This document shows, in pieces, positions 12,768-61,419 of a stretch of DNA of 64,000 nt. Position 1 is the first letter of the stretch; the number at the start of each line of letters is the position of its first letter. The notes beneath the pieces are model-generated. The model was not told the origin of the DNA and ran no database searches. It worked only from the letters and a program-made list of their open reading frames with translations. Origin of the DNA: Octopus sinensis. Its lineage: Eukaryota. A program made the translations under genes and the position numbers. Location of the stretch: contig NW_021833039.1 in NCBI RefSeq assembly GCF_006345805.1, positions 22,458 to 86,457 on the forward strand, in the 5' to 3' direction.

Positions 12768-13175
12768 ATGTCTGAAGGTTTGAATTTGATATTTACGAGT
12801 AGTTCAAGAGCTTTGGAGACCATGTTGTCGAGACGAGATAAATGATTTTGTTCGAGAAAGCAGGGCGATGAGCTCCAATCAAAACCATGTTAAGCCACCT
12901 CACCGAGTCCAACTTCTAAATTTTCTCATCGTTGAATACTTACAGTTCCACAACTACAATCACACTGCATTGACACTGGAAACCGGTATTAGGTCGACTG
13001 TAAGTCATAGAAACGGGGTCGCATTTCTTTATAAATCGTAGTGAAATGATGAGGCGGCTGACCCTCCAGGACAGTAACTGCACTGCCGCAATGTGATAAT
13101 GCTTCCACTAGATCATTTAGTTCTCTCTTGACGAACATTCTCTTTGATGAAACTGAGATCTCTGAACAACACTAA
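12768..13175 (+). CDS. CEP20: LisH-domain centrosomal protein, CEP20/FOPNL(FOR20)-like, 4 exons, about 109 aa
   Basis: Splicing introns 12778-12802, 12986-13010 and 13093-13120 gives an open frame with PPHRVQLLNFLIVEYLQFHNYNHTALTLETETG (LisH) and ISLLTNIL; absent from the ORF track. LisH family call is firmer than the orthology. Confidence 0.65.
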
Positions 13176-13320
13176 ATTATTTTTAAATACTGACTTTTTT
13201 ATGTGCGTCCATTTCGTAAAAATACACTTTCTTCAATAAGTCATCTTTCTTCTCAATTCATTTGGCACATTTGTTAATTTTTTTGATGGATCGTTCATAG
13301 AACTCATCTAAGGTCTAGAG

Positions 13321-13680
13321 CAGCGGTTCTCAAGAATTTTTAGCAGCACATTTTTTTAACTTAACAAAGATAAAGTATTTGTTATTTCAGTTTGAACGGA
13401 AGAAGATACATGTGATTTTTGTTTTACTGTGTACATCCAATTTAGAGTTGAGCGCTATCGCCGCACATTTTTTAAATAACTTTATAAACTACTTAGTCAT
13501 ATTTTCAAAATCTGGTACGATATTATATGTCGAGGTCCGCAACAATAAACTTAAATAAACATCTATATCTGTTCTTAATTTTTCTTTCCGAAATTCGAAA
13601 TTCCACATAATCTTAGCTATCTTGCTGAAAATGATTCGCTTACGTATATTTTGATCAGAAAATTGAAGCATTCATATATG
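13321..13680 (-). mobile_element. Buster/Charlie-type hAT 3' end remnant
   Basis: TIR CAGCGGTTCTCAA preceded by GTCTAGAG (typical NTCTAGAN target); LR..STYNIVPDFENM dimerisation-domain-like remnant. Confidence 0.65.
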
Positions 13681-13907
13681 CATTATTCACTAGATTCTTA
13701 AATTTTTCTTTAGGTAGACATTGGTAAAATTCCAAAAGGGAAGTATTATAAAATAAGGCACTCAACTCTAAATTTCTTGTCAAATCACTTAATTACATTT
13801 GGAATCGTACAGGACATTCTCCAATTTTGACATCGAAGAGTGTCGCAAATATTTTCATTAAGGGTAAGTTTTCTCTAAAATTTTACATTTTAGTATACAA
13901 TGGTAGT

Positions 13908-14923
13908 TCAAAATTTAGTATGACCCCCCTGAGCATTAATTGCGTCTAAAATTCTGTTCCGCATTGTTCCAACAAGGGATGTCGCATATTCTATTGAAAG
14001 ATCATTCCAAATATTTTTTAATTCCTCAAATAGGTCACTCTTTTTTTTAAATTCAGTCCCTTTTATTTTATGTTTCATGAAGGCCCACACGTGCTCGATT
14101 GGATTCAAATCGGGACTTTGAGGAGGCCATTGTAATAACTCAATTCGGTGTTCATTAAAAAAATCTTTAGCCACCTTGCATGTGTGCTTTGGATCATTAT
14201 CTTGCTGATAAATTGGAGACCGGATCCCGGTTTTCTCCAAAAAGGCAACAAATAGTCCGCCAAGATACTTACATACAAGTTCCCATTCATAATTCCCTTT
14301 ATCCAAACAAGTTCCGAAAAACATTCCGATGTAAATGCGCCCCAAACCATTACGTTCTCTTTTCCAAACTTGACTGTTGTAGTAACATTTTCGCTAAAAA
14401 GCCTTTGTCCCCTTTTTCTCCAGACAAATTTTCTTCCATCGGGATTAAATAGATTGAATTTCGATTCATCACTAAAGATAACTCGATTCCAGAACACATT
14501 CGGCAACATGTTCCACTTAATGCACTGAGAAAGTCTAGTCTTTTTGTGTTCTTTCGACAGATATGGCCTTTTCGTAGGCTGAAACGTCGATATGTTCAGT
14601 TTTTTCAAATAGTTCCTCACTGTCTGTGATGTGACAGCAGTTCCCGTTTCAGAACGTAAAATTTCCGAACATTTTACGGAATTGAAAACAACGTCAGTTT
14701 TTTGTTCACGTTGAATTATTCCGAGATCATCAGAGTTAAGTTTAAATCTTCGTCCTGAGCCTTTTTTTCTCTGGAAGGAATCATTCATGGTGAAGTTTCG
14801 AATGACTCTCGAGATGGCACTCAGAGATCTTCCGGTCAAATTTCTTATTTCCCGATATGACTTTCCGACTTTATAATACGTAATAATTTCTGCTTTTTCT
14901 TGTAATGTAAGTTGTAAAACCAT
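13908..14923 (-). mobile_element. Tc1 transposase DD34E, full-length but with one frameshift
   Basis: HTH, FSDESKF, QQDNDPKH-34 aa-DLNPIE, GGHTKF*; a single T loss in a T-run near 14240 joins the two ORFs; TIRs not identified. Confidence 0.92.
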
Positions 14924-17838: not shown

Positions 17839-19197
17839 TTATTGAAATGTGTTAGATTGTCTGAATAATTCTAGATTGACAAAATCGACGATGGCTGAAA
17901 CCATCTGCAGTAAAAGAGAAAAAGTCACCTAGAACAAACTCAAGCTAATGTACATTAATCCAGGCAGGAGTGTCAGTGACCTTCTTCCAATTGTACTCGT
18001 CTCCAAACCCCTTGTTGAAACTGACGTTGGCAGTGCACCACTCAGACCATCTAAACATGCGCTGATCGAATGCATCTGACATGTTAATGATTATCTCTAC
18101 ATTTGTTGTTGTCGGTCAAAAACAACTGAATATCTTGGATGATGTCTCTGAACACTTGCCGCATGTTGCAGATCTTCCTAGTGCTGAGTCACCCAATTAC
18201 CTCGATTCTCTGCCTACTCGTTAGTCTGGTGATACTGCGCCCCGACTTATGATTCACTTCAACAAAGATACAACGAGTCGCGTTATAAGTCAAACTGATC
18301 ACGTGTCGTGGGTTTCTTTCGAAGGTGACCCCCTCACAAATGTAACTTCTACTTGATGACTGAAAAGTGTAAAACTTTGAATGCTCGGAACATTTGTTAC
18401 TCTGAGTAGTTATGATTGCTCCCACGGAATATTCATGTTTACTCCCCAAGACACGATTTCCGGTGACTGTGAACTGATTTATCGAAGGACAGGCAGTGAA
18501 AGCGCCTCCTTTCGACACTCCGAACTCCCAGTACTGGACGGAGCACCAATGATAATAATCTCTATTAAATATCGATTGCATACAAATGTGGAGATATCGC
18601 TCAAATATTTCATCCAGTCCTCGCACTAGTCATGAATCACTCCAAAAATACTCAGTTCCGAGTTGGTGGAACAAGTCGACTCGTGTAACTTGTTTTCTAA
18701 AATGAGGGATTAATTCAACCAATGAGCAGCCTCTCGCTTCTCTCGCATCGGTAGTGGTATGGGTTTATGCACATGTGAAGTTGCCCTTTCCGAAATCCGT
18801 TTTCGCACAAAGAAACCAACTCACAGATTTCCACATCCTCCACCCGGAAGAGACGAAAGATAATCACGTGCGGGTAGTGTTTTCTCCCGGCAATCTGAAT
18901 CAGTCGTGGAAAGTCAACCTGAATTCGTCCATCAACAGTGGACTCGATGCTCACACATCCTGTCGCTTGACGCCCTCCGTTGACAATTGCTTTAACAAAG
19001 TCTTGGATAACCTCGGAACTTTTGAATCTTCGGAGAAAGCCTTTGATCAAAGTTCTTGAATTCTCCTGTTTTGTCCCGTCTCTGGGAACTGTGCAGAAAA
19101 TTAGATCGTCTGTGATTTCGTTGTACTCCCCGTCTTTCCCAAACATTTCTGAGACAGACGCGTTTTGTCCATTTAAATATCGTGTTGGTCCGGACAT
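17839..19197 (-). CDS. SMAD: Divergent Smad (MH1 + MH2), 5' end uncertain
   Basis: MH1: GCVSI, DGRIQ|IAGRKHYPHV, LCENGF, CINPYHY (Zn ligands kept); MH2: WCSVQYWE, SFNKGFGDEY..VTDTPAWI; joined by 22-26 nt introns; no C-terminal SSXS. Confidence 0.9.
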
Positions 19198-20918: not shown

Positions 20919-23180
20919 ATGAATACTCTAGAAGATTTTCCATCTCACCCTCTGATTCGTGCTCTCTATGATGTCTGGTTGAGAATCTGTGAAGTGTCGC
21001 GTAATTTGATTCGTATAATATTTTTAATGTTAATTAGCCAACCTGAGTCAAAAGTTCGGCAGATTAATTGAAAAATCTATAAATTAGCATAATCCTAAAA
21101 ATATATTGGAAATCGCCGTCGACGCCTCGATGTGCTGTTCAATTTGCAGGCTGAAGGAAATGTTCAGGGAATTTCCAAACAGTGGCAACCCAGGTGAATA
21201 TACTAACGATTACTCCAGTAGTTTGGCATGCGGGAATCCTCACGGGCTGGTTAGTTGAGGTCCAAATGGATTGGATCATGACCAGCTTACGATTTGAGGA
21301 CAATCTATTTTTTTCTGACTTTGATTTCCCCGACTCGCAGTACTTTCCGATTTTGATCTGTAGGGAAGTGTTGGATTTGGAGACACTCCAGAGACTGCTT
21401 AATCAGATTCTTGACAACTATGAGGGTGTGGGGACTAATCTGAACATCCAAACTCTATTCCGACATATTGAAAAATTTGTAGTTGAGGGAAAATGTTTAA
21501 ATGAGTTAGTAATTGTCGTATCATTACAGTCTCGATATGCCTGTTCCCCCAGCCAAGTCCATCAAATGTAGACTCTTTGACGTTCGAACGATTAAATAAC
21601 ACGTAGAATGGGATCGCGTTCGGGGAATGTAGCCAGGATCTCCAAGTTTGTAGAAGAATTTCTGGCTTTGTGTACGAGGACGAAATCGAGCTGATAAAAT
21701 GGATGCATGTCCGCAGCTTCGAAAATGTTCTTCCGGTTGGTTCGTTGTTTAACAGCCAGAGTTCTCGATTACTGCAAATGTCCGACACAAACTCGAATCT
21801 AGAAATGTCCTTCAACCAACAAGGAATCAACGTCTTTTTCGCGCTGCTCAAATTCCTGGAGGTCAGTCCATAATAAAATTTGCAGAACGAATACGACGTC
21901 GCAAATTATTTCCGAGTCATATCCCCGGCGTCGTCAAATTGGGATTTGTGGGATAGAATGGGCTATGGAAATGAGTTTGTGGGGACCTACGAAGTATAAT
22001 TGTAAAATTCTACTCTAGAACATGTTTCTCATCTGTCCTGCACGAGACAGAAAAACCTATCTAATAAATAAGAAAATTCCTTTTCATTGGTCCGCCAGTC
22101 CACTCATTTTGTAGTATCTACTTCAAACAGATGAGTCCCCACTCTTGGGACTTGCCTGTTAAATTGGTAGACTACGATCCCATCTTCTCAAACGCCGGTC
22201 AGCACTCTGACATGACATTCTTGAACAGTGTCTCCAATTACGACGATTCGTGCGTGTTCTGTTCCAGGGAAAAGGTCACTCCCGACTTGTCAATTCTAGT
22301 TGCAAGACGAACTCGTCGGCGTCCTTAATTTGTGCAAGTCGATTTATTCCGCGTTTGACCTCGACTTGTCGGCAAAATTCATTTCAAAGCCTTTGATGAA
22401 TTCAACAAGACACGAGGAGTGTGATTTGATTACCCAAGTTGACGGTGATTAATTTACCAGATAATTCGGAGTGCTCTCTCGGCGACGGGGATCACCTTCG
22501 AAGAGAGCGCTGGATATTCCCAACTGCCCTTTGTACTATTCCTGGCTAATGTACTAGGTAACTTTTAACGTCCGGACGTATGACGACTCCACTTACACGT
22601 GCGGGATCGTGGAGGTGGACCTCACTTCGGGGGAGAGATTTGATTTATTCTACGAATAGTCTCACCCTTGTGTCCAATGCCTAGTGATGGTTGCAGAAAG
22701 ACTCCCGCAATCATTCATCATCAAATCATTGGGTCCATTCAAGAATTCACCAAGATCTTACTTCACCACTACAAGGGATATTGGTTTGTTCACATTCCTG
22801 ACCTCAGGCCATTCTGGCTTTCCCCGATACAATGCACCGTCGTTTCTTTGCGAGAGGAGTTTTTGGAATATTCAAAGACGGTACTCTTGGTGGTTATAAC
22901 CCAGGTCTATCAAACTATCCGAAGACGGCACATTCGGGCAGTCATGTCTTGGAATTTCGACTGTTGCATCTCCGATCGACTCAATAACGCAAAAAAGAAT
23001 TCAAGCTTTACTCTGGGTAATATGTCACTCCAACTACGCCCAGTCATTGGACGGGAAGAGCTTATGCAAAATCAAGTTCACGTGATTGGGACCAACTTGG
23101 ATTTGGGACGTGTTTCCGTGGAGGTGGCAATCGACTTGATGAGTGAATTACTCAATACGAAAAGCCGACAAGTTTTTTAA
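20919..23180 (+). CDS. Threonyl-tRNA synthetase paralogue with degenerate catalytic and editing sites (pseudo-enzyme); 5' end uncertain (20919 or 21130)
   Basis: Splicing about 14 micro-introns gives colinear similarity to ThrRS: VVWHAG, RRISGF, NEY..ANY..VISP..LW...ENMF, PFHCIYF, LPVKLVDY, DDSCVFC, CGIVEVDL, PAIIHHQIIGSIQEF, YWPFWLSPIQ, VIGREE. Confidence 0.85.
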
Positions 23181-24074: not shown

Positions 24075-24789
24075 ATGGCAGAGCAGCTCGCTTCGATTTA
24101 TGGGTCAGAAAAAGACAAGTATAGAGGGTATAGTCACAAGCAGAGTAAATTGTTCATTTTTCTTCAAAATCGGAGCATGCAGACACGGGGACCAGTGCAC
24201 GCGCATTCACAACAAACCCAACTTCAGCCAAACCGTGCTGATCACGAACATGTTCCCGGGGGCACAGGTGAGTCACCTCTACTCGGGGTCAGCTCCAAGT
24301 TGGTCTGCAGACTAACCGGCAGTGCCCACCAATTCGGAGGACCAGAGGAAGTTCGAGGAATTCTTCGAGGAGGTGTTTGTGGAAATGAACGACAAGGTGG
24401 TCATCCTCCTGACGTGTGTAGTACGGCCCCATCGAGGAAATGAACGTGTGCGAAAACGTGGGCGACCATCTGCTGGGGAATACTTATGTGAAGGTGGTGG
24501 CCTCCCCTCATCCCAGTTCTACGAGGAGGAGGACGCCGAGCGGGCACTCCATGCACTCAACGACCGGTGGTTCGGAGGCAGACCATTGTACGCAGACCTG
24601 TCCCCTGTCACCGAGTTCAGGGATGCCTGTTGTCGGCAGCACGAAGTGGGGTACTCCTCCCTCTCACCTCCCAGTGAGTGCACTCGGGCAGGCTTTTGTA
24701 ACTTCCTTCACATCCGGGCCATCTCCAACGAGTTGAAGACTTATCTCTACCAACGGGCACGCAGCACTCGCAGACGTCGTCGTCGTTGA
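24075..24789 (+). CDS. U2AF1: Splicing factor U2AF small subunit (U2AF35)
   Basis: MAEQLASIYGSEKDK|VNCSFFFKIGACRHGD, UHM ...GNTYVK|F..RWFGG, CCRQHEVG|ECTRAGFCNF; introns 24119-24143, 24397-24421, 24494-24516, 24651-24674. Confidence 0.97.
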
Positions 24790-24924: not shown

Positions 24925-25734
24925 ATGGGTCTCAGAAGTGCTCGTTGTTTGATTCTAACGGCCTCCCTTCTATTTGCAGTCAGTCCACTCTCCATTAACA
25001 TAATGCAGGGGATTGGTGCTCTAGCAATCTATTCGACCGTGTTGAGTGCAGAGAAATTCTTCCCGATTGTCCACAAATTTGATTTGAAAACCTTCCCAAT
25101 CTCACTGATCCCCTTCTCAATGTCCCTCACGTTCTCCATAATATTCGTGTTCGCTGCCACATTCGGCCTGTGTGCTCTCCGGAATAACATAAGAATGCGG
25201 AAAACAGTACGAGTGTTTGTGTATTGCCAGTACTTCATCCTCGTCATGATCATTGGGGGAATAACCCTGGCCGTCCTCGTGCTGTGCTTCATCAACCACC
25301 AGAAAGTACTCCCCGCCCTCACGCCCAGCTGCCTCTCCGTGCAGTGGACTACCTCCGCACTGCCATCACCAACTACAACACCACCGCCGACAAAGTTGAC
25401 TTTATTCAGCGACTGGTGAGTGCCTGCATAACCCCCAGTTTTCCTGCTGTGGAGTGGACGGTCCCGGGGACTGGAGTGCCCTCAACATGTCTATCCCCCT
25501 CAGTTGCTGTCCTCATAGTAATGACACTGTGTGCGACCACCCTGTCTCTGTTGGGTGTGAGTCTGAGATCACCTCCCTCGACTCCAAATACTTTGTGTTG
25601 TCTGTTTCCGTGGGAATCGTCTTTCTGCTATTCACGGTATGTTTTCTTGGTCACCGCAGTTGATCTCGGGGGTTGCCACTTGCTACCTCCTCAAGACACA
25701 ACCACACTTTTACGGAACATACTACCCCATTTGA
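24925..25734 (+). CDS. Tetraspanin
   Basis: Four hydrophobic segments, large loop with CCG (FSCCGVDGPGDW), SCC and GC motifs across micro-introns. Confidence 0.85.
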
Positions 25735-25977: not shown

Positions 25978-26992
25978 TCACAATTGCTTTGAAAGCGGCG
26001 GTTTAATGGTTGAAGGCCGGGAAGTGGTGGCTGCGGGATTCGAAAAGGTATCTCTGTCTGGGCAGAGGCAGGTTTGGAAAGGGTATTTCTGTCTGGGAGG
26101 TGAGAGTGTTGGCATGGTGGAGACGAGCATAGGCACAGAAGGGTGTTTCCGTGAATTGGGGATTGAGAATTTCACTGCTCAACTGACGGGGCAATCTACG
26201 GACGGTACAACAGGGGTACCAACGAATAAAGACTGGACAGCACTCGAGGATTAGGCCGACTGCTCGACCCTGCAATGGTGAGAGACGTGGGAACCCGAAT
26301 TGGGGGGGACGGGAGTCTTGTCCACCTTTTTAGTATTCATTTGAATGACTCGGTCGATGGAGGCACTACAAATGTCTCACAAACTCACCGTTTTTTGAAT
26401 CGTTTACTTCGATTGACCGCCCTCTCCCGATCAGCCTTGTACTCCCCTCCAATCAAGTTCACGGCCTGCTCTATGAAATTGTCCACCACGAGTGAGGGAC
26501 AGCAGCACGTGATTGGGGAACGACAGATGGGACATGATCCATGTAGATTGTAGGCATTGGCAGTGCGAGTCCACTTTTCCAGACAGAGCAGACAGAATGA
26601 ATGTGAGCAGTTGAGTGCCACACTCTGGAGTAAAGGCCAACACAACCTGCTTCAGTAGAGAGTAGCAAATGTGGCAGGTTAGTTCTGCCTCGATGGTGTT
26701 AATCAGTTCTTGTTCGTTTACTCTGTGGACACTTTCAGTCTCACGCCTTTTGATTGGGGTGAGCCCGAATTTGGAGATAAGGTCATGTTGGAGTTCTTGT
26801 TTCTAAGTGTTGATTAGTGATCCAATAATTGATAAATATTATGTGGGCTGACCGCATTACAGTAAATAGGGAAATGGCTACCTTGCGACGCCCATTGAAG
26901 CCGTGTCGCTTGCATATAGTCCGGAGTTGGTTGTAGGTCAGTTTCAAGACTTGTTGGGTGCTGTCTAATTGGTCGGGTGAATCGATCGACAT
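25978..26992 (-). CDS. SAP-like domain + C3HC4 RING E3 ligase (RNF8/CHFR-like RING region)
   Basis: LTYNQLRTICKRHGFNGRRK|KQELQHDL (SAP-like); CHIC...LNCSHSFCLLC...CPIC; SLVVDNFIEQAV post-RING helix; Pro/Ser-rich tail after a 23-nt intron. Confidence 0.75.
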
Positions 26993-41965: not shown

Positions 41966-42453
41966 CTAATTGTAAGAATTGAGGCTGTTATTAGAAATAA
42001 TGCCCAAAATAATGTTCAGGCTTATAGTCTGGCCAATATTCCCACATCTCGGTCGACGAGTAGTCGTAGGTGGACTGATATTCTGTCGGAGTGGAATGAA
42101 GTGTATCTCCGTAGTACCCACTGTCCCCAGACACATCCGCATATTCCGCGAATTTGAGGTTGCCGTGTTGAGCCGCCGCCTTTTTGCTTTTCCTGTCCTT
42201 GGCCCGCCTGTTCTGGAACCAGACCTACCGACATGTTCACAAGTCAAACCTGGATCCTCCCTTCAGAGAGGTTAATGAACTGGGAAAGACGTTCTCTGAC
42301 GAATATGTCGGGGTACTGTGTTTCCGTGTATGATTTTTCCAGCTCCTCAAGCTGATGTTGACTGAAGGCAGTTCGATGTCTCCGACGTCCCAGGAGAGCA
42401 GGACGGGGTTTGGTGTGTGGAATGGAATGAGAGTCATTACTGGTTGGTTCCAT
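41966..42453 (-). CDS. PRD-class Q50 homeobox protein (Prop-like)
   Basis: [46 protein letters not shown]|[12 protein letters not shown]; 25-nt intron 42225-42249. Confidence 0.92.
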
Positions 42454-43471: not shown

Positions 43472-44145
43472 ATGTTAGTGCGACCAAATGTATTCCTCAA
43501 ACGGGCTGTCCGCGACTTTAATTTACTAAGTTCGGTCGTGTATAGCAGTCCCCTGTCGGTGGTGTTCAATCCTTCCTGGAAGTACAGAAAGTCGGTATTG
43601 CTCAATGTGAGAGGCAGGTCATCAAGCCGGCGGCCATCACACTCTACACGCACACTCTCTGTGCAGTCAACAAAGAATACTTACGGAAGGGTACTCCCTT
43701 CGCCGTGTTTAGGCCTGCGAATGCCGGAGACCTTCTCCTCCTGGTTCAAACTCATGGTCCTGTTCACGTGGTTTGTGTGTGTTCTCCATGCAGGATTGTC
43801 ACTCGCCGAATGAGGGAGGAAGGAGTGCGGGGGCGCATGTTCAACCACTTTTACTGCAACACCTTCTGGTTCGACGTGGCCAACATTCTCAAGTCCTTTC
43901 CTGTACGATTGCCTGTGTATTCAGGACACTCCCCACACACACGTCAGGGATGTCACCAAACAGTGCAAGGCAGAGTTTCACGAAAGTATGCTCGCCTACC
44001 AATCGGTCGCCTTTTTTATCATTTTCAGAGCTTTTTCGATTCTGACATATTCTACAACTATTTGAGCAAATACTTACTCGAATATGCCCAAAAGGACAGC
44101 CTGGACAAGAGGACTGTCCTCGCATATGTCTCCCACCAAGTTTAG
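43472..44145 (+). CDS. UQCC1: Ubiquinol-cytochrome c reductase chaperone (CBP3/UQCC1)
   Basis: FSSWFKLMVLFTW..RRMREEGVRG....FWFDV resembles the UQCC1 core; basic N-terminus compatible with mitochondrial targeting. Confidence 0.65.
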
Positions 44146-47827: not shown

Positions 47828-47957
47828 CCAGTTGTTCGCTCCCGGCCAATAATTAGAATTACAATCATTTGCTAATTTTTAACCAATCTTAATCTCTTCT
47901 ACATTCCCGAGCTTTATTCATTCACTTAGAGGAGGGAATTGAGGATATAACATTGTC

Positions 47958-49477: not shown

Positions 49478-50161
49478 ATGGCTGAGGTGGCCTACTGGAT
49501 ACTTCAGGAGGGCACTCCTCTCCGGTTTGTCAGAGGTAATCGAATTATTGTAATTTGTGATAGAAAACCTGTTCGAGTGCAAAGCAACCATTTCCCTCAT
49601 CCAGGCTGATTACAACATAGTAGTCGACACAGGGTCGCCCTGGGATAGAGACCGACTAATTGAGGGTATCAGCCGACTCTAATGACAGAGCTGGGCAGAC
49701 ATGACCTGACTCCTCGGGACATTGACTACTGCATATGCACACACGGACACCTCGATCACGTGGGGAACATTGGACTCTTCACCTGGTCGACCGTGATTGT
49801 GTCCGAGGATGTTTGCAATAACGATTTATACGACATGGGATGTTCGGGGAGGGTGACTTGAGTGGAGGTGTATTGTCAGTACAGCATTGGGAAACATGTC
49901 GAAGTACTGTCCACGCCGGGTCACGACGCCCGGGACATTTCCGTGTTGTTGAGGGACACTCCGGAGGGGACAGTCGTATTCTGTGGTCTCTTTAGGAGTA
50001 TAACGTAAGGGGACACATTCGAGTGTAAGGATGACGATGAGTTATGGAAAGGACACAGCTTTGACCAAGAACGGCAACTAATCAGCAGGAATGAGCTTTT
50101 GGGATTAGCCGACGTGATAGTGCCCGGACATGGCCCTCCATTTAGTGTGAGGGATAAGTGA
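49478..50161 (+). CDS. MBLAC1: Metallo-beta-lactamase domain protein 1
   Basis: IVVDTGSPW, THGHLDHVGN (HxHxDH), TPGH, DVIVPGHG. Confidence 0.9.
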
Positions 50162-50183: not shown

Positions 50184-51805
50184 TCATATTCGTGACACAA
50201 CTCTGAGACAGTCGACGGGGACGTAGCCCTGTTCCTCCTTCCCCCGACATCGACTGACGTAGTGCCACCCAATCCTCGACCCCTCGCACAATATCTCCAA
50301 CTTCTCCCCCGCCGCCACCGACATGGCCCGGTCGCAAGTCGCTGCACTAACACACAACACCAACAGTGATAGTCCGTCTTCACCAACGCGTACAGGGGTT
50401 CGTAGACTGACGAGAATTCTCTGCTTTGCCTACAAATCAACTCGCAACGTAAACCGAACGGCTGGACTGCACACACCGCCCCTGCTCATAGTCAGCCATA
50501 CCTAACCTGAGAACACTTTCTGCCTCCAGTATTTTGCCCACGAGTGTCGTGCAGGTCTGAATCACTCGAAAGTATACCCTTTCATCCGACACTTTTTTCA
50601 ACGCATTTTTGATGTTCTTGTCCACTTTGGAAAGAAGGGACTCCAGTCGGCACATGTTTCCCAGTCTGGGGTTGGACTCGTACACATTTCGGAGAGCCCC
50701 CAGTTTCAGCCTAACCTCCACTGCCCTCCTCACCTTTGGTTGGCCAACTTGTGAATGTGGAGACCAAATGTTCGACAGTCTTGTCCTGTTTGGTGTTCTG
50801 TTCGTAGTCCGGCGGCACGACGGGGGCAGGCAACTCCCTTTTGATGGACGTCTGACACATTTCCTCGACCACCTAAACGGGATTACACTTCGAGGCTTCC
50901 TTGGAATAACTCAACTTGTCCACCAAACTGGGCAACTGGCCGATTCTCCCAAACACAAGCTCGAATTGGCTGTGGAGAACGGAGGAGAAGTGGCTGAGCA
51001 CATCCCGTTCCCCCTCCACCCGCCGTTCGGTCTGCGAGGCCAAGTCCTGCGCGTGAAGGGTGGGGGAAACCTTGACCAACGCGTCGACTTGTACGAGAAT
51101 GCAGTTGTGTCGGAGGGTGTTGAACTTGGTGGCCTCGTCCTTGCACAGAGTGTCCACGCGGGAGAAGATCTCATTCCGCAGGTCCTCGTTCTTCCTCGAC
51201 TTGTCTTGCTCTTCCTCGGACTTGTCGGACTCCACTGTCCGCCGATGGGCCTTCGAGGCGTCGAGGAAGGCTCGTCGATGTGCCTCGAAATGCTGAATTG
51301 GTCATTTTATCAGACCTGTGCCAATACTCCTTGTTCCTTCGATATCTTGGAGAATGTCGAGTCGTAGGCTTTCTCTGCCTGGGAGTGACACAAGCACATT
51401 GCCTTCTTGTTGTTCGTTCTGAAGGAGTTTATGTTCATTTTGAATATTTCGTCGTTCTGGCTGTAATTCTCGAACACCTTCTCAAACAACTGCCCCACCT
51501 CCCTCGTCCAGTCGAGCACGGAAGAGAAGACCAGTCTGTCGTCACTGGGTAACACATCCCACCAACTTGCAGTACTCCCGCAGCTTTATTTGGTAGTACT
51601 TGTCCGACAGTTTCCTACCGTTGGAATACGCCCATACTTCAGCGTGGACCCGTAGTTCCTGGTGGCTGCCGCAAAGTCCTTGCAGAACTCGTTCACTTGC
51701 GCGTAAAAGTCGATGCCCTTCGCGTCAAAGTCAGTCAAGTCCCCAAAGTTGTTCTGAGGGAGGAGGCAGAGGAATTACCCAAAAAGTGTAGTCCCAAGCA
51801 GTCAT
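50184..51805 (-). CDS. F-BAR/HR1/SH3 protein (CIP4/FNBP1/Toca-1 family)
   Basis: N-terminal FCH (W....W.NF..L...GIDF), coiled F-BAR, HR1-like VYESNPRLGN, SH3 end EEQGYVP. Confidence 0.8.
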
Positions 51806-53136: not shown

Positions 53137-54079
53137 TTGGACATGTTCAGGGCGGCCACGGCAGCACAGGCCTCCTCGTATTTCACAAAGTTGACAAAAC
53201 CAATACTACTCGCCCAGGTGGTGTTGCCTGGGAGGGAATTGACCGAGGCAATGGCCCCGAACCGAGAAAAGAGTTGGTACAAGTGGAGATTAGTAGATCC
53301 TGGGATTAGGTTGGACACATAGACACAGTGGTGTTGCACAGGGGGCACATTCCGGGCAACAGGACTATACCGAAAGTAGTCATAGTGGGAGTAGGGGAGG
53401 AAGCCAGTGGTCACTTTGACGGAGGACTGTCGGGCATATCGCACAATTATGTGTTTGTCAGTGCCTGGGAGTACTTGTTTGCAGTTGAGCACGGCAATGG
53501 CCGACTCTGCACACACAGGGTGGTAGAACATGACCATTCCACTGCACTTGGACATGCCGTGGGCGTCCACCAACAGTTTGAGGGACTGCACAGGCCCGAA
53601 TGTCTCGAAAAGCATCTTCAAATTGTTTTCCATGAACGAGGGCGGCAGGTTCTGCACGTACAAATTCCGCAGTTCAGTCTTGCCCGTCTGACAGCGAGAG
53701 AAGCTGACGTGGATGGCCTTTTGGTCGACGACATGCCCGTCGAGTGTGTCGATGGCCTTCTGGGACTGTTCCTGTGTGCCGTAGGAAATGAATCCGTAGC
53801 AGAGGGAGGTGCCACACGACTGGTCCATCATCAGTCGACAGTTGGTGACCTGAGTGAGGGGGAGGCCGTACATTGGGGACTGTCGTGAAGAGGGAGAATA
53901 ACGATTCGGGGGTGATTGAGGGGGCCAGGTTGCTGACAATCAGTTCGCACTTGTCCACTACGAGTGTGTGGGGGAAATGCCCAATGGACTGCTGAGGGGG
54001 GAGAGGGGGATTCATGTACCCGTTTCTCGCATTTGTTTCTACATTGTAGGGCTGGATAACAACAACCAACAAAACTCAT
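53070..54079 (-). CDS. ELAV/Hu-like three-RRM RNA-binding protein
   Basis: LIVSNL...CRLMMD...SLCYGFISY...AIDTLDG, NLYVQNLP, RRM3 VYVSNL...GFVNF...LNVSFK. Confidence 0.88.
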
Positions 54080-56973: not shown

Positions 56974-57594
56974 TTAGAAAAATATATTATCAAAATAAAG
57001 GTCAGTCAAATCAGGCTTTGGCATGTCTGGTTGGCTGTAGAAAGTGTCGTCGGCCATGCGCATTTTATTGGTTTGGATGGAGTAGTCCAACTGGAATGTG
57101 AATGAGCACACACCTTGTCCTTCTCTCTGTCGAGGAGCACTCTGCACTCGTGCGGCCCCATGTCCTGGTTCTTGAACAGCACATCCGAGACGACGGTCTG
57201 GTTGGCCAGCAAGTAGTGGTGGTTCTGCATGGTGTCCCACAAAGACGTCAACTGCCCCAACTGCTCACTCAACACAGAGTGGTTGAAGGACATGAGGTTG
57301 TCCTTATACCGCCTCTTCTCCCGGGACTTCCTGGCAGCCTGGTTGGGCAGGGGGGAGTACTTCGTTGTTCTTCATCCTCTTCTCCCGGTAGTCCCTGTCT
57401 GTGTGTTCGGGCACGTCCTCCTGTTTGCAGAAGGTGTCACTCGAGTCGAGGAAATAGGGCCATTCGGGGAGTTGTGGGTACTGCAGAAAGTGACTGTCGT
57501 GTGGCCAAAGGGGGTAGTCCTCGGTCTCCTGTGTGATGGGGAAGTAGAAGGAGTCGTCAAAGGAATAACGGGAATTGATTCCGTCATCTTCCAT
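56974..57594 (-). CDS. bZIP transcription factor (PAR/E4BP4/C-EBP-like basic region)
   Basis: DYREKRMKNNE|AARKSREKRR after a 22-nt intron; weak leucine zipper. Confidence 0.8.
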
Positions 57595-57752: not shown

Positions 57753-58255
57753 TTATTGGCAATAGTAACCCAGTCGGGACTCGTAGAAGGAGATGACCGT
57801 CTGCGGACACCGAGCATTCGCCACCGACACAGGAATCAGGTCGTAGAGGGGAGTACTCGACTTCCTGCACAATCGACAGGGTTGGATACCACTTCATCAG
57901 GAACATTGGCCTTCCCTCTATTTTCTGCAGTTCGACAATCCTCTCGGGGAGAAGGCCTCGATTAAAACCCGTCTCCCCCTCCAGTCCAGTGGGACTCACT
58001 TCCACAAGTCTCCTCACACTTGAACTGGCCGACTTTGCTTTTTTGGCCCGCTTAATCTGTTTGCATTTATTTTCATATTTTTTGATGAGGTTAGGGGAGA
58101 ACATGCCACATTCCGCCTCCCACGTGTTTTTGTCGCTGAAATGACATTGCGGAATACCTGGGGAGCCCCTTCCACTTGACCAAATAGTGGGTGATGCCGT
58201 TGACCACCTTCTTATCCTTAATGCTTTCCACCTCAAAAGTGTCTGTCGGCGACAT
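57753..58255 (-). CDS. CBX: Heterochromatin protein 1 (chromo + chromoshadow)
   Basis: FEVESIKDKKVVNGITHYLVKWKGLPS|DKNTWE; GFNRGLLPERIV...FLMKW; CPQTVISFYE. Confidence 0.93.
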
Positions 58256-58381
58256 GATTTATACGAATATATTAACAACAATACAAGTCAGTTTGAATAA
58301 CTTGTACTATTAAAAATATTAATTTTGATTTATCTTAAATTAATTAGTTTAATAAACAAAGACTGATTATTTTGCTCGAAC
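58256..58381. promoter_or_regulatory. 126-bp AT-rich putative bidirectional promoter between HP1 and MCEE
   Basis: Divergent ATGs at 58255 and 58382 with only AT-rich DNA between them; function inferred from geometry. Confidence 0.55.
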
Positions 58382-58889
58382 ATGTTTACCTGTGTCATTT
58401 CCCGCACTCTGTCCTCCACAGGAATCACTCAACTTAAACACGTGGCCATTGCAGTGCCCTCCCCCCAACAAATCGGGAGTATTCTCCACCACCTCCTCTC
58501 ACTGACCACCCCCCTCTTCACTGTAATATTCCACTCCCTCACCCCAGCCAGTCACTTCGCAGAGAGTAAAAGTCTGCTTTAACAACTCGTTAAACACACA
58601 AGTCGAGGTTGGTTTGCCCACTGATTCCAGTTCATTTGTCCACTGGGCGACGACAGTCCAATATCTCGGTTTGTCCAGCAGAAAAAGGGACTCCATCACA
58701 TTTGCCTGGGCGTATTTCTCTCTTGGTGACTCGAAGGTTCCCAGTCTGGACGAGTTTGTCACCAGACTGAGAAATAATGGCGTGAGGACGATATCACGGA
58801 AGCCCTTCATTGGGGCTCACGGAAGTAGAGTTATTTTCCTCCACCCAAAGGATTGCCACGGTGTTCTCATAGAACTGGAAGAAAATTAA
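58382..58889 (+). CDS. MCEE: Methylmalonyl-CoA epimerase
   Basis: LKHVAIAVP, GLHHICLG|V, IGAHGSRVIFLHPKDCHGVLIELEE. Confidence 0.95.
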
Positions 58890-58951
58890 AAATAATTAAT
58901 ATTTTAATTATATTTATTCAAATAATATTTCTTTATCACGTGCACAACCAG

Positions 58952-61419
58952 ATGATTCACCTTAATCAACTTTTTGCGGGATTGCCTCCCACAGAGAGCA
59001 CAGTGGAGGAAATAGAGGAACACATCAAATCATTTATTGCACTCAACCAGAGCACGTACTCTCTTGTGGTATTCGTAGAGACCTCGTCGAGGCAGTAAAG
59101 GAATGTGTCTGTGAGTTCATCACACATAACTATTCCACCAGGCCTAAAGAGGCACCCCCATTCCCCATCAAAGTAAAAGACCACATTTATAGCCCAGATT
59201 GACTCACATTCAATGGAAGCCCTCCTATGTTCAAACGGAGAGAACCTCACTCCAGGATATAATTTTCCCGCCCTCTCAGTGGCCTATTTGTTGGTGAACC
59301 AGCCATCCCAGTCGACTGTAATGCACATCCCTAAGAGTAGAGAATGATGTTGTGGAGACTGCGAGTGCTCGTTCTCCTCCAAAGCACTCTCTCTGAACTG
59401 TCCCCCCTCTTGAAGGACAAATGCCTCCACTTGGTCGACTCAAGTGAGTGTCTGTGTAATGCCCAGTCACCCACTCCCCCGAATATCCCTGTTTCATGTC
59501 CCAGGAGGGCACCACTGAGTTGGACTTTTTGTTGGAGATTGGATATATTTACGAGGAATACTTCGAATGGGACAAACTGAACAAAGTTCTCCAAACCATC
59601 CACCAAAAGAAGGAGATCACGGTCGAGTCGACTGGTCGGGTGTTGTGGTGACCCTCAGGTGTGCCTGGGCGGACTACTCTCCACCAAACATTCGACGTGA
59701 CCCAGCTGGTGGTGCTCATTCGTCGATCTGCCGACACAGTCCCTCCATTCCCCCCACATTCCCCCTCCCCCATTCAGGATATTCCCCTCAATGACGACGT
59801 TCTCCTGGAGAAAATGAAGCCTTCAGTGGAGATGCCCCCAGTCCCCTCTCTGTCCCCCTCCGAAGTGGCCCTCGTCCTCTTCGAAGCGTATGTGCCTGAT
59901 TAACATCCAGTCGACATGAACTGAGTCGGCGAGCTCGGGATGCCACTCAGGACATGATTGTGTCTGCATATTGCCAAGTATTGTGTCCTCTCACCCACAG
60001 ACCCTCCTGAGTCTCGATTTGAACGTGTTTGCCCACGCGGCAGTCCTCTTCACTCGGTGTCTGGTCGAACTGTCCTCCCCCAACAGAATTCAGAGAGCAT
60101 TGATGCAACTGGAGGTGGCCTGTGCTCACATTGGCAGGAGTTGGTCAAACCTCGAAGTACAGCATTCACCCTGGCACACTTCTTTTCGATTCGTCCACCC
60201 TCCCTCTACTGCATTAGAGTACGCGGGGGTCTGACTGTAGTGCAAATTATGTCGTGTTTATATGAGTGGAGGACTGTACTCCTCCGCCCTCGAGTTGTTG
60301 GAGAGTCTGGAGAAGTGGGATGACCTCATCGAGTGTTATGGACACCTCGAGCAGAGAGCGAAGGTCGGGCAGTCCTTTATTGTAGGCAGAGGAGTTGATA
60401 AGACGGCGGATTGCAGAAAAGGAGACGCCTGCTCTGTTGTGCTACTTGGGGTGTGTGACCAAGGAGGCTGAGCACTACCACCGAGCCTGGGAACTGTCGG
60501 GGCACAAGTCCGGGGCGGCTCAGCGAGGACTGGCATTTCTGCACTTCCACCGGACACAAACCAAGGAGTCCATTCCCTACTTCCGTCGAGCAGTGGAAAT
60601 TAATTCGTTGATGGTTGGTGGTGTTAGTAATGCAGTACTATGTCTGGTTTTCCTATGGCTGTGCCTGCATGGCCGAGTCCTCTTCAAAGAGGCCGCCAAA
60701 TGCTTCCTGGCCTGCATTCGAATAGAGAACGAGGTCTGTCTGTCAATATTGTAGAGTTCCAAAGCGTGGACCAATTTGTCAGTGTGTGTAATGCAGTACG
60801 ACACCGAGTATTTGTGTCTGTCTACTCGTAGTAAGAAGAGGTGCATTCGAATGGCCCAGGAGGCAGCCCGTCTGGACTACGACAACCCCAAAGTGTGGGA
60901 GAATGTGTTATATGTACTCCCCTCGTCTCAGTATTCCAGCTCACTGTCGACACCACTCAGGTCAGTCTGGCCATTCAAGCATATCAACGACTCCTTGATA
61001 TAAACCACAAATTCAGAGATCTCGAAATCTTGTTGTCCTTGGCCTCCCTCCCGAGTGGAGACCACACAGCCAAATTGATGGAGTTGTGTGTTCGTCACGA
61101 AAAGACGTGTGTGGAGGACGGAAAGGACGGTCTCCTCCTCTATGCCACACTGTCCACTCTGCAGAGGAAAGTGGTGGATGGCTCTTGTTTTTGTGCAGAG
61201 GAGTATTTATTGGTGGTGGGGTGGTGGCTGATTATAGTTGTTGGAATATATGAGCAAGTGTTTGAACCATCAACTCCACATCCAAGGGTGGACTGCCTGT
61301 GTCAGCACTGTCCAGTCCGTCGAGGAGAGATGCTGTGACTTGTTGGAGTGTATGAGTTCTCTTATAACTGCCAGGCTGCAAGTATTATGCTGAAAGGGTT
61401 ACTGCTAATTATTCTCTGA
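58952..61419 (+). CDS. TTC27: Tetratricopeptide repeat protein 27
   Basis: SALELLESLEKWDDLIECY, EKETPALLCYLG...YHRAWELS..KSGAAQR, DNPKVWEN TPR array. Confidence 0.88.

What the first reader, a model, noticed from the sequence alone, without database searches (positions are those of the whole stretch)
12768..61419. Genome-wide 20-30 nt spliceosomal micro-introns in a metazoan
Seen: frame-restoring GT-AG introns of 22-28 nt in almost every gene, e.g. U2AF1 25/25/23/24, homeobox 25, OSC 23, HP1 22, bZIP 22, CEP20-like 25/25/28. Many lack a polypyrimidine tract, and some carry a CTAAC branch-like motif. Established: introns this short are near the lower limit known for spliceosomes and have been reported in dicyemids. 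Inference: the window comes from such a lineage, and standard gene finders will miss genes here (two were recovered by hand).
Basis: partly seen in the sequence, partly recalled or inferred. Interest (0 to 1): 0.7.

Follow-up and report, generated by a model that had tools for sequence, protein, structure and literature searches.

The report
Ultra-short 22-25 nt animal introns
Nearly every gene in this stretch of a fast-evolving animal genome is interrupted by tiny 22-25-base GT-AG introns; the pattern is real but is already described for dicyemid parasites (and, since 2026, myxobolid cnidarians).

Summary
Aligning homologues and Pfam profiles to the DNA verified 56 GT-AG segments in 14 genes. 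They are 21-29 nt long (mean 23.8, SD 1.4, mode 23). Removing them restores gapless, full-length matches. No verified gene has an intron longer than 31 nt.

In a codon-based chaining test, GT-AG ranked first of all 256 terminal dinucleotide pairs (58 uses against 18 +/- 6).

The signals are minimal: G|GT(a), a YAG acceptor, and no pyrimidine tract after the branch site. A branch-like YTNAY occurs in 23 of 56 introns (5.9 +/- 2.2 in shuffles). Its A lies 16-17 nt from the 5' end whatever the intron length.

Two further CaMKII segments that must be removed have GC-AG and GT-TG ends.

The genome belongs to a fast-evolving protostome: CDC45 matches molluscs best, at 37-38%. No myxozoan and no same-species protein is in the database. 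A dicyemid is the most likely source but is not proven. The mean length is about 2.5 nt below the published Dicyema figures of 26-27 nt.

Micro-introns of this kind are already described (Dicyema 2007-2019; Myxobolidae 2026), so this is a correct but known finding. No RNA data were available.

The parts
12768..13175 (+). CEP20/FOPNL-like gene (LisH), 108 aa after splicing. Introns 12778-12802 (25), 12986-13010 (25), 13093-13120 (28).
   Evidence: Hand splicing. LisH 27.2 bits, above the curated cut-off. FOP_dimer match spans the second junction but is below cut-off. The first and third introns are supported only by frame and by my recollection of the human sequence.
17972..19146 (-). SMAD gene (MH1 + MH2). 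Verified introns 18076-18100 (25) and 18174-18200 (27). Predicted introns 18626-18651 (26) and 18697-18719 (23).
   Evidence: Gene-chaining model. The MH2 profile match at residues 183-358 spans the junctions at aa 299 and 323.
21670..22398 (+). Unidentified gene with five predicted micro-introns: 21736-21759, 21862-21885 (24 each); 21994-22018, 22090-22114, 22275-22299 (25 each).
   Evidence: Gene-chaining model only. Not verified by homology.
24119..24143 (+). U2AF1 intron 1, 25 nt
   Evidence: Spliced alignment to P0079. Junction DK|VNCSF is gapless.
24299..24322 (+). U2AF1 intron 2, 24 nt, contains CTAAC
   Evidence: Needed for the frame; contains an in-frame stop.
24397..24421 (+). U2AF1 intron 3, 25 nt
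   Evidence: Junction NDK|YGPIEEMNVC is gapless.
24494..24516 (+). U2AF1 intron 4, 23 nt
   Evidence: Junction YVK|FYEEEDAE is gapless.
24651..24674 (+). U2AF1 intron 5, 24 nt, stop-free 3n
   Evidence: Removal restores the spacing of zinc finger 2 (CRQHEVG|ECTRAGFC).
25306..25328 (+). Tetraspanin intron, 23 nt
   Evidence: The Tetraspanin profile match rises from 35.5 to 67.3 bits and covers positions 26-224 of 225 after splicing.
25416..25438 (+). Tetraspanin intron, 23 nt
   Evidence: Restores the CCG motif (IQRLFSCCGVDGPGDW).
25637..25659 (+). Tetraspanin intron, 23 nt
   Evidence: The profile match spans the junction at aa 222.
26625..26646 (-). RING-finger gene intron, 22 nt. Two further predicted introns: 26366-26388 (23) and 26270-26294 (25).
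   Evidence: zf-C3HC4 matches positions 1-40 of 40 across the junction at aa 44.
27700..27722 (+). DLST lipoyl-domain intron, 23 nt
   Evidence: Biotin_lipoyl matches positions 3-73 of 73 across the junction.
28208..28231 (+). DLST catalytic-domain intron, 24 nt
   Evidence: 2-oxoacid_dh matches positions 2-232 of 232, 271 bits, across the junction.
28330..28350 (+). DLST catalytic-domain intron, 21 nt (the shortest verified)
   Evidence: Junction TTFNQVDMS|NVIAM lies inside the full-length 2-oxoacid_dh match.
30289..34378 (+). Large unidentified gene with a RING-like Cys cluster. About 15 predicted micro-introns of 22-28 nt, e.g. 30566-30588, 30812-30834, 30929-30951, 31283-31305, 31924-31949, 32295-32317, 32448-32471, 32719-32746, 33095-33116, 33209-33233, 33612-33635, 33931-33952, 34218-34242.
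   Evidence: Gene-chaining model only. No Pfam hit. The 51-59 nt links in this model are probably wrong.
37132..37582 (-). CaMKII association-domain exons. Predicted introns 37562-37582 (21), 37485-37509 (25), 37339-37363 (25), 37221-37243 (23).
   Evidence: Gene-chaining model. The spliced product aligns to the human CaMKII hub up to aa 435.
37667..37691 (-). CaMKII intron, 25 nt
   Evidence: Spliced alignment to 2bdw, gapless.
37815..37836 (-). CaMKII intron, 22 nt
38016..38038 (-). CaMKII segment that must be removed, 23 nt, GT...TG (non-canonical 3' end). Has CTCAT with its A at -7.
   Evidence: There is no AG anywhere in the interval. Removal gives AWHG|LAGTPGYLSPEV, gapless to 2bdw. The score rises from 315 bits in two pieces to 417 bits in one.
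38139..38160 (-). CaMKII intron, 22 nt, GC...AG
   Evidence: There is no GT in the interval. Removal gives HRDLK|PENLLL.
38234..38256 (-). CaMKII intron, 23 nt
38323..38345 (-). CaMKII intron, 23 nt
38401..38424 (-). CaMKII intron, 24 nt, stop-free 3n
   Evidence: If retained it adds 8 aa that the homologue lacks.
38485..38507 (-). CaMKII intron, 23 nt
38603..38625 (-). CaMKII intron, 23 nt
38951..41440 (-). Oxidosqualene cyclase (lanosterol synthase) gene, 718 aa, 14 introns: 39062-39084 (23), 39164-39185 (22), 39357-39380 (24), 39462-39484 (23), 39551-39575 (25), 39779-39801 (23), 40072-40096 (25; the alternative donor gives 31), 40154-40176 (23), 40297-40320 (24), 40552-40574 (23), 40711-40734 (24), 40954-40978 (25), 41088-41110 (23), 41330-41355 (26).
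   Evidence: Spliced alignment to human LSS 1w6k, score 1800, essentially gapless at the junctions. The N-terminal intron was placed by hand. The spliced product covers 99-100% of 730-aa animal LSS proteins at 52-55% identity.
42225..42249 (-). PRD-class homeobox gene (CDS 41991-42453) intron, 25 nt, between homeodomain codons 46 and 47
   Evidence: Homeodomain profile matches positions 1-57 of 57, 78.6 bits, across the junction.
43493..44133 (+). Unidentified gene. Predicted introns 43595-43617, 43691-43712, 43771-43793, 43903-43924, 44006-44028 (22-23 nt).
   Evidence: Gene-chaining model only.
44654..44678 (+). Prolylcarboxypeptidase (S28) intron, 25 nt
   Evidence: The spliced product aligns to human PRCP 3n2z residues 12-441. 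The junction is gapless.
44933..44954 (+). PRCP intron, 22 nt
45280..45301 (+). PRCP intron, 22 nt
45455..45479 (+). PRCP intron, 25 nt
45898..47839 (-). CDC45 gene, 12 introns: 45960-45983 (24), 46061-46084 (24), 46204-46228 (25), 46313-46332 (20) or 46310-46332 (23), 46469-46491 (23), 46548-46570 (23), 46782-46806 (25), 47248-47271 (24, CACTAAC), 47422-47450 (29) or 47422-47444 (23), 47546-47570 (25), 47667-47690 (24), 47751-47773 (23).
   Evidence: Spliced alignment to 10 homologues. Eight introns were chosen by 8-10 of the 10. Four junctions lie in variable regions and were resolved by inspection.
49557..49957 (+). Metallo-beta-lactamase-fold gene. Predicted intron 49666-49688 (23).
   Evidence: Gene-chaining model. 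Lactamase_B hit.
50211..51774 (-). Unidentified coiled-coil/SH3-like gene. Predicted introns 51615-51637, 51545-51566, 51293-51315, 51047-51070, 50721-50748, 50419-50441, 50342-50364 (22-28 nt).
   Evidence: Gene-chaining model only. No Pfam hit.
53850..53871 (-). ELAV-like three-RRM gene (53070-54057) intron, 22 nt
   Evidence: RRM_1 matches positions 1-70 of 70 at residues 39-109, across the junction at aa 62.
57339..57360 (-). bZIP gene intron, 22 nt. Predicted second intron 57091-57113 (23).
   Evidence: The bZIP_2 basic region (KNNE|AARKSREKRR) spans the junction.
57865..57889 (-). HP1 gene (CDS 57753-58255) intron, 25 nt, in the chromoshadow domain
   Evidence: Chromo_shadow matches positions 1-50 of 52 across the junction. 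Restores FLMKWK.
58136..58157 (-). HP1 intron, 22 nt, in the chromodomain
   Evidence: Gapless alignment to CBX5. Chromo matches positions 1-53 of 53.
59177..61419 (+). TPR-rich gene (my guess from reading the sequence: TTC27-like). 11 predicted introns of 21-26 nt: 59318-59340, 59444-59466, 59635-59658, 59888-59910, 59978-60000, 60115-60137, 60219-60240, 60364-60385, 60734-60754, 60914-60939, 61216-61237.
   Evidence: Gene-chaining model only. No Pfam hit.

Best explanation
These are ordinary U2-type spliceosomal introns shrunk to a nearly fixed 22-25 nt. They sit in the compact, gene-dense part of the genome of a fast-evolving protostome animal, most probably a dicyemid.

Inferred mechanism. 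The intron is recognised as a unit, with minimal signals:
- an exonic G followed by GT, with a weak preference for A at +3 and G at +4/+5;
- a branch-like YTNAY whose adenosine lies 16-17 nt from the 5' end whatever the intron length;
- the next YAG 6-10 nt further on as acceptor.

There is no room for a polypyrimidine tract between branch and acceptor. Where a C/T-rich run exists, it lies upstream of the branch A. A fixed distance from 5' splice site to branch, plus a short scanning distance to the acceptor, would explain the very narrow length distribution (SD 1.4 nt). It could also explain why a GC donor and a TG acceptor are tolerated in CaMKII.

Shown here: the segments exist, they have these ends and motifs, and removing them restores conserved proteins.

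Inferred: that they are removed from RNA by the spliceosome, that the YTNAY adenosine is the branch point, and that the organism is a dicyemid.
For: - 56 GT-AG segments in 14 genes were verified by homologue-guided spliced alignment or by full-length Pfam matches across the junctions. Their lengths are 21-29 nt, mean 23.8, median 24, SD 1.4.
- No intron above 31 nt was chosen although up to 400 nt was allowed.
- GT-AG ranks first of 256 dinucleotide pairs. There is an excess only at 22-28 nt compared with decoys.
- Exon position -1 is G in 37 of 56. Intron position -3 is C or T in 51 of 56. A is enriched at -8/-7.
- YTNAY with its A at -12..-6 occurs in 23 of 56, against 5.9 +/- 2.2 in shuffles (maximum 14 in 2000). 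On the first 41 verified introns it was 18, against about 3.8 expected from other GT..AG 22-25-mers of the same region.
- The motif's A is at position 16 or 17 from the 5' end in 20 of 23. The same trend was reported for myxobolids and D. japonicum (PMC13644364).
- The spliced OSC covers 99-100% of animal lanosterol synthases. The spliced CaMKII aligns in one piece at 417 bits.
- Transposon ORFs in the same window carry no such segments.
- An intact U2AF1 gene is present.
- Lineage: all top named CDC45 hits are molluscs at 35-38%. The window sits on a long branch inside protostomes. There is no myxozoan hit.
- Literature: Dicyema introns are 26.2 +/- 1.9 nt (PMC2222250), median 27 nt (PMC6543705). 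The D. japonicum genome is compact and rich in LINEs (PMC6736024).
Against: - No RNA evidence was available, so splicing itself is inferred.
- Fewer than half of the introns (23 of 56) carry a recognisable branch motif.
- The mean length of 23.8 nt is about 2.5 nt shorter than the values published for three Dicyema species. The organism may therefore be another species or lineage.
- No dicyemid sequence could be compared directly.
- Four junctions in CDC45 and one in OSC lie in variable regions, so their donor or acceptor is ambiguous by 3-9 nt.
- Four stop-free 24-nt segments could formally be 8-residue insertions rather than introns. They do fall inside conserved motifs, have the typical ends and have the typical length.
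Confidence: 0.9

Rival explanations
1. The micro-introns are real, but the genome is not a dicyemid. It belongs to another fast-evolving bilaterian whose micro-introns have not been described, or to a dicyemid genus with distinctly shorter introns.
For: - The mean of 23.8 +/- 1.4 nt (n=56) is below 26.2 +/- 1.9 nt (n=16, D. acuticephalum, PMC2222250) and below the median of 27 nt (Dicyema sp., PMC6543705).
- No dicyemid or same-species protein appeared in three database searches.
- The NJ placement is only 'long branch inside protostomes'.
Against: - Among 51 surveyed animal genomes, only myxobolids and D. japonicum have such introns (PMC13644364).
- The high TE load, the LINE reverse-transcriptase fragments and the compact gene islands fit the D. 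japonicum description (PMC6736024).
- The genome-wide length mode of D. japonicum was not available to me and may well be 23-25 nt.
Confidence: 0.25
2. The window comes from a myxobolid myxozoan (a parasitic cnidarian). Its introns have medians of 22-27 nt.
For: The length mode of 23 nt is closer to the 22-nt median of Thelohanellus kitauei and Myxobolus rasmusseni than to the published Dicyema values. The reduced 'GTa ... AG' signals are shared (PMC13644364).
Against: - No myxozoan or any cnidarian protein is among the 77 CDC45 hits. Among the top 120 U2AF1 hits, no named hit is a myxozoan, although T. kitauei proteins are, as far as I recall, in the public set.
- CDC45 is closest to molluscs and falls inside protostomes.
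- U2AF1 is 65% and LSS 53-55% identical to bilaterian proteins. From my own knowledge, that is much less divergent than is typical of myxozoans.
- Exons are 45-55% GC, while H. salminicola is 29% GC overall.
Confidence: 0.04
3. The segments are not removed by the spliceosome. Either the frames are restored by DNA elimination (IES-like excision), RNA editing or programmed frameshifting, or the genes are decaying pseudogenes or assembly artefacts.
For: No RNA data were examined. One segment lacks an AG and one lacks a GT. From my own recollection, not checked here, developmentally regulated DNA elimination has been reported in dicyemids.
Against: - 56 of 58 segments have GT...AG, and GT-AG is unique among 256 end pairs.
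- The YAG acceptor, the exonic G and a positioned branch-like motif are spliceosomal hallmarks.
- Ciliate-type IESs end in TA, not GT...AG.
- About 100 indels all of 22-25 nt cannot be random decay.
- cDNA-genomic comparisons in Dicyema showed such segments to be introns (PMC2222250).
Confidence: 0.02

Closest known systems
Dicyemid micro-introns (Dicyema acuticephalum, Dicyema sp., D. japonicum; PMC2222250, PMC6543705, PMC6736024)
   Same: - Bilaterian parasite genomes with uniform sub-30-nt GT-AG introns at about 5-6 per gene.
- Reduced 'GTa' and 'AG' signals.
- Conserved intron positions. Here the PRD homeodomain 46/47 position is, from my own knowledge, a conserved one.
- Divergent proteins and a TE-rich but locally compact genome.
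- A-rich presumptive branch site whose distance to the AG grows with intron length.
   Different: The mean here is 23.8 nt, against the published 26-27 nt. Identity with any dicyemid sequence could not be tested. GC-AG and GT-TG micro-introns are not mentioned in the papers I read.
Myxobolid myxozoan micro-introns (Henneguya salminicola 27 nt; Thelohanellus kitauei and Myxobolus rasmusseni 22 nt; PMC13644364)
   Same: Median length is 22-27 nt. Splice signals are reduced, with no polypyrimidine tract. Weak A residues lie upstream of the AG. U2AF1 is retained.
   Different: Those are cnidarians with very AT-rich genomes. The window's proteins group with protostomes and find no myxozoan relative.
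Ciliate micro-introns (Paramecium about 25 nt; Stentor 15-16 nt) and the Bigelowiella nucleomorph (18-21 nt)
   Same: These are spliceosomal GT-AG introns with an extremely narrow length distribution, which implies measurement of distances inside the spliceosome.
   Different: They are protists with different gene content. Ciliates such as Paramecium also reassign stop codons (my own knowledge). Here the genes use standard stops (TGA, TAA) and are typical animal genes.
Orthonectid short introns (Intoshia linei, median 57 nt; PMC6543705)
   Same: A simplified spiralian parasite with shortened introns.
   Different: Most orthonectid introns exceed 30 nt. None of the verified introns here does.

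Membership tests
U2-type (GT-AG) spliceosomal introns | GT at the 5' end and AG at the 3' end | tested here: met
   56 of 58 verified segments have GT...AG. GT-AG ranks first of 256 end pairs. The two exceptions are GC-AG, a known U2-type variant, and GT-TG.
U2-type (GT-AG) spliceosomal introns | Removal restores the reading frame and colinearity with orthologous proteins | tested here: met
   Gapless spliced alignments for OSC, U2AF1, CaMKII, PRCP, CDC45 and HP1, and full-length Pfam domains across junctions.
U2-type (GT-AG) spliceosomal introns | Branch-point sequence (yUnAy) upstream of the 3' splice site | tested here: inconclusive
   YTNAY with its A at -12..-6 occurs in 23 of 56, against 5.9 +/- 2.2 by chance. 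The A is at position 16-17 from the 5' end in 20 of 23. The other 33 have at most an A at -8/-7. Branch use itself was not measured.
U2-type (GT-AG) spliceosomal introns | Polypyrimidine tract between branch point and AG | tested here: not met
   Only 4-8 nt separate the branch-like A from the AG. The pyrimidine fraction at -8..-3 is 0.59. Where C/T runs exist, they lie upstream of the A. The same is reported for dicyemid and myxobolid introns (PMC13644364).
U2-type (GT-AG) spliceosomal introns | Absence from mature mRNA | not testable with these tools
   No transcript data were available. No same-species protein is in the database.
Dicyemid micro-introns | Uniform length near 26-27 nt | tested here: inconclusive
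   The length is uniform (SD 1.4 nt) but the mean is 23.8 nt and the median 24 nt. Published figures are 26.2 +/- 1.9 and a median of 27.
Dicyemid micro-introns | Host genome is a dicyemid (a fast-evolving spiralian) | tested here: inconclusive
   CDC45 matches molluscs best, at 37-38%. It sits on a long branch inside protostomes. This is consistent with a dicyemid, but no dicyemid sequence was available.
Dicyemid micro-introns | Reduced splice-site logos (GTa ... AG), with A residues that move away from the AG as length grows | tested here: met
   compared with the description in PMC13644364.
Myxobolid micro-introns | Host genome is a myxozoan cnidarian | tested here: not met
   No myxozoan or any cnidarian appears among the CDC45 hits, and no named myxozoan among the top U2AF1 hits. 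The protein places among protostomes.
U12-type introns | Conserved /RTATCCTT 5' site and TCCTTAAC branch site | tested here: not met
   None of the 56 intron sequences listed has these motifs.

The most novel reading that the evidence does not exclude
The window belongs to a species or lineage whose micro-introns have not been characterised. At a mean of 23.8 nt they would be the shortest known in Bilateria. Its spliceosome would place the branch adenosine at a fixed 16-17 nt from the 5' splice site and choose the acceptor mainly by distance, which would let it tolerate a non-AG (TG) 3' end.
Probability: 0.2. Interest if true: 0.55.

Novelty: already known. Interest (0 to 1): 0.3.

Why it matters
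Introns of 22-25 nt are well below the roughly 30 nt once considered the minimum for animals. They therefore bear on how little RNA a spliceosome needs between its three reactive sites.

This window gives a clean, homology-verified sample of 56 canonical and 2 non-canonical introns. It shows a fixed distance from the 5' splice site to the branch-like A. That is a concrete constraint for structural or biochemical work.

The practical point also stands. Default gene finders and spliced aligners, which usually set a minimum intron of 20-50 nt, will fragment almost every gene here. Stop-free 3n introns will be silently translated.

The phenomenon itself has been published for dicyemids since 2007-2010 and genome-wide since 2019. 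It was reviewed alongside myxobolids in 2026.

Tried and rejected
- A naive ORF-bridging count (any GT..AG joining two open frames of at least 30-50 codons) was too noisy. In GC-rich DNA, overlapping open frames are common and all dinucleotide pairs scored alike. I replaced it with codon-scored chaining and decoys.
- The first chaining runs without a splice-site or length model linked neighbouring genes through spurious 50-150 nt 'introns'. Those long links occur equally with decoy ends and were discarded.
25-mer in U2AF1 was rejected. Removing it breaks the frame, and read-through fits the homologue.
- Homologue-guided alignment sometimes picked 15-19 nt introns in variable regions of CDC45. 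Inspection showed 24-25 nt alternatives with equal or better fit.
- Looking up the spliced U2AF1 product or a raw exon ORF in public assemblies gave nothing.
- Rfam and tRNA scans of the window found nothing, so there is no snRNA gene to examine.
- Three protein database searches found no same-species or dicyemid protein, so the organism could not be named. LSS and U2AF1 identities do not discriminate between phyla.
- Supplements of the two key papers held no usable intron-length tables.
- Pfam on unrefined models of the large 30-34 kb gene, the 50-51.7 kb gene and the 59-61 kb gene gave no hits. Their introns remain predictions.

Full report
**What the window is**

The 64-kb window is eukaryotic and has two parts.
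- Bases 1-24,000 are 31-40% GC and hold transposon ORFs: a Pif1/Helitron-like helicase, a Tc1/mariner transposase and reverse-transcriptase fragments. They also hold a 97-bp satellite.
- Bases 24,000-62,000 are 42-55% GC and densely packed with animal genes. These include U2AF1, a tetraspanin, a RING protein, DLST, CaMKII, oxidosqualene cyclase, a PRD-class homeobox gene, prolylcarboxypeptidase, CDC45, an ELAV-like protein, a bZIP protein and HP1.

In every one of these genes the reading frame is broken every few hundred bases.

**Checking the observation by homology**

I wrote a protein-to-DNA spliced aligner (BLOSUM62) that allows GT-AG introns of 15-400 nt with one fixed penalty and no length preference. 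I ran it with real homologues obtained from tool outputs.
- CDC45 against ten animal homologues gave 12 introns.
- OSC against human lanosterol synthase 1w6k gave 13, plus one at the N-terminus placed by hand.
- U2AF1 against an insect homologue gave five.
- CaMKII against C. elegans 2bdw gave seven canonical introns.
- The prolylcarboxypeptidase model, with four introns, aligns to human PRCP residues 12-441.
- HP1, with two introns, aligns to CBX5.

Every intron chosen was 31 nt or shorter. Most junctions lie in gapless, strongly conserved alignment.

Pfam scans of spliced models gave full-length domain matches running across further junctions:
- Homeodomain, positions 1-57 of 57
- zf-C3HC4, 1-40 of 40
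- Tetraspanin, 26-224 of 225
- 2-oxoacid_dh, 2-232 of 232
- Biotin_lipoyl, RRM_1, bZIP_2, Chromo, Chromo_shadow and MH2

The spliced OSC (718 aa) covers 99-100% of 730-aa animal lanosterol synthases at 52-55% identity.

In total, 56 GT-AG introns in 14 genes are verified. Their lengths are 21 (1), 22 (8), 23 (18), 24 (11), 25 (15), 26, 27 and 29 (1 each). The mean is 23.8, the median 24 and the SD 1.4.

A trained chaining model predicts about 126 introns in the window. Of these, 102 are 22-25 nt. The longer ones are links between genes or obvious errors.

**Is it more than chance?**

- A codon-usage chaining program with no splice-site model and no length preference used GT-AG introns of 22-28 nt 22 times. 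Five decoy end pairs were used 4-8 times. At all other lengths, real and decoy ends behaved alike.
- I repeated the test for all 256 pairs of terminal dinucleotides at 21-26 nt. GT-AG ranked first with 58 uses, against a mean of 18.1 and SD of 5.9. The runners-up (TG-GT, GG-CA) are one-base shifts of true GT-AG boundaries.
- Transposon ORFs in the same window show no such interruptions.

- U2AF1 has five introns (25/24/25/23/24), not four. The 'GTGAGTCACC...' 25-mer that looks like a perfect donor is exonic.
- OSC has 14 micro-introns and HP1 has two.
- The claims for the homeobox gene (25 nt) and the bZIP gene (22 nt) are right.

**Anatomy of the introns**

- The 5' site is only G|GT, with A at +3 in 28 of 56 and G at +4/+5 in 25 and 32 of 56.
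- The 3' site is YAG (C 34, T 17 of 56), with G favoured at -4.
- A is enriched at -8 and -7 (26 and 22 of 56).
- A branch-like YTNAY, mostly CTCAC or CTCAT, with its A at -12..-6 occurs in 23 of 56. Shuffled interiors give 5.9 +/- 2.2, with a maximum of 14 in 2000 shuffles. On the first 41 verified introns the count was 18, against about 3.8 expected from other GT..AG 22-25-mers in the same region.
- The motif's A is at position 16 or 17 from the 5' end in 20 of 23 cases, whatever the intron length. Its distance to the AG therefore grows from 6-7 nt in 22-nt introns to 9-10 nt in 25-nt introns. Hadjez et al. 2026 describe the same behaviour for myxobolids and D. japonicum (PMC13644364).
- There is no space for a pyrimidine tract after the branch site. 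C/T runs of 8 or more occur in about a quarter of the introns, and they lie upstream of the A.
- CTAAC itself is rare: 2 of the first 41.
- Thirteen of the 56 are multiples of three. Of ten 24-nt introns checked, six carry an in-frame stop. The other four are stop-free and detectable only because they would insert 8 residues into conserved motifs, such as U2AF1 zinc finger 2.

**Non-canonical cases**

In CaMKII, two further segments must be removed to restore HRDLK|PENLLL and AWHG|LAGTPGYLSPEV.
- The first, 38139-38160 (22 nt), is GC...AG.
- The second, 38016-38038 (23 nt), is GT...TG. No AG exists anywhere in that interval.

With both removed, the protein aligns to 2bdw in one gapless stretch of 417 bits. 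Before removal it aligned in two pieces totalling 315 bits. The TG acceptor follows a CTCAT at the usual distance. It may be a true distance-selected 3' site or a single-base assembly error.

**Most likely mechanism**

These are U2-type introns recognised across the intron with minimal signals. They have a fixed 16-17-nt distance from 5' splice site to branch and a short 6-10-nt distance to the first suitable YAG. That explains the narrow length distribution.

An intact U2AF1 is encoded in the window. It has both CCCH fingers and the UHM-type RRM (Pfam PF00642 and PF00076 in its homologues), and a very short RS tail.

Removal from RNA and use of the A as branch point are inferred, not shown.

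**Which organism?**

- All top named CDC45 hits are molluscs (35-38%), followed by arthropods and amphibians (32%). There are no cnidarians or myxozoans among the 77 hits, and nothing above 38%.
- On a trimmed alignment, the window is 41% identical to Haliotis, while Haliotis and a frog are 53% identical to each other. In an NJ tree the window is a long branch inside protostomes.
- U2AF1 is about 65% identical to arthropod and mollusc proteins. LSS is 52-55% identical to everything from molluscs to mammals.
- So the source is a fast-evolving protostome whose proteins are not in the public protein set.

Among 51 surveyed animal genomes, only Dicyema japonicum and myxobolid myxozoans have sub-30-nt introns (PMC13644364). 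The D. japonicum genome is compact, 49% repeats and rich in LINEs (PMC6736024). A dicyemid is therefore the best guess, at about 0.65-0.7.

The mean length here is about 2.5 nt below the 26.2 +/- 1.9 nt of D. acuticephalum (PMC2222250) and the 27-nt median of Dicyema sp. (PMC6543705). I could not find the D. japonicum distribution. Another species or an undescribed lineage remains possible. A myxozoan origin is unlikely.

**Comparison with what is known, and verdict**

The finding is correct in both observation and interpretation. It describes a phenomenon that is already published:
- Dicyema gene samples in 2007 and 2010
- Two genome papers in 2019
- A 2026 comparative paper that includes splice-site logos and the moving-A observation

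The points that go slightly beyond what I found in the literature are:
- the tight 16-17-nt position of the branch-like A
- the GC-AG and GT-TG micro-introns in one gene
- the shorter mean length

All three need RNA data and an identified organism before they mean anything. I score interest at 0.3 and novelty as 'already known'.

Noticed in passing
window 38016-38038 and 38139-38160 (- strand): Two CaMKII micro-introns have non-canonical ends: GT...TG (23 nt) and GC...AG (22 nt). Both are required for a gapless kinase-domain alignment. The TG case could be a real distance-selected acceptor or a base error in the assembly.
   Followed up: partly
window 24651-24674, 38401-38424, 40297-40320, 40711-40734: Four 24-nt introns have no in-frame stop. 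If retained they would add 8 residues without breaking the frame, so frame-based gene finding cannot see them.
   Followed up: yes
window 47422-47450 (- strand): CDC45 has two in-frame GT donors 6 nt apart that share one acceptor, giving a 29-nt or a 23-nt intron. Homology favours 29 and the length rule favours 23. This may be alternative 5' splice-site use.
   Followed up: partly
window 24075-24789 (+): The U2AF1 protein is only 197 aa. It ends in a six-arginine tail instead of a long RS/Gly domain. In zinc finger 1 it has Thr where the insect homologue has Ser (C-T-R-I-H against C-S-R-I-H). From my own recollection, not checked here, this residue influences recognition of the -3 position in human U2AF1.
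   Followed up: no
window 27941-28167 (+): The Ala/Pro-rich linker between the DLST lipoyl and catalytic domains is encoded by a 21-nt tandem repeat of 10.8 copies at 90% identity.
   Followed up: partly
window 143-663: A 97-bp satellite of about 5.6 copies, up to 96% identical. It creates repeated spurious ORFs on the minus strand.
   Followed up: no
window 1023-1622 (+), 13911-15010 (-), 29136-30204 (-), 35841-36278 (-), 55231-57102 (both strands): Transposon-derived ORFs: a Pif1/Helitron-like helicase, a Tc1/mariner transposase with a frameshift, and LINE-type reverse-transcriptase fragments. None is interrupted by micro-introns. One reverse-transcriptase fragment sits between DLST and the next gene.
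   Followed up: no
window 1-24000 versus 24000-62000: There is a sharp compositional split. One side is an AT-rich, TE-rich region with a few lower-GC genes (CEP20-like, SMAD). The other is a GC-rich gene island where neighbouring genes lie only about 60-220 bp apart. Examples: U2AF1 stop at 24789 and tetraspanin start at 24925; OSC stop at 38951 and CaMKII start at 38735.
   Followed up: partly
window 42225-42249 (- strand): The single intron of the PRD-class homeobox gene lies between homeodomain codons 46 and 47. From my own knowledge, this is the classical conserved intron position of paired-class genes, which would mean the position was kept while the length collapsed.
   Followed up: partly
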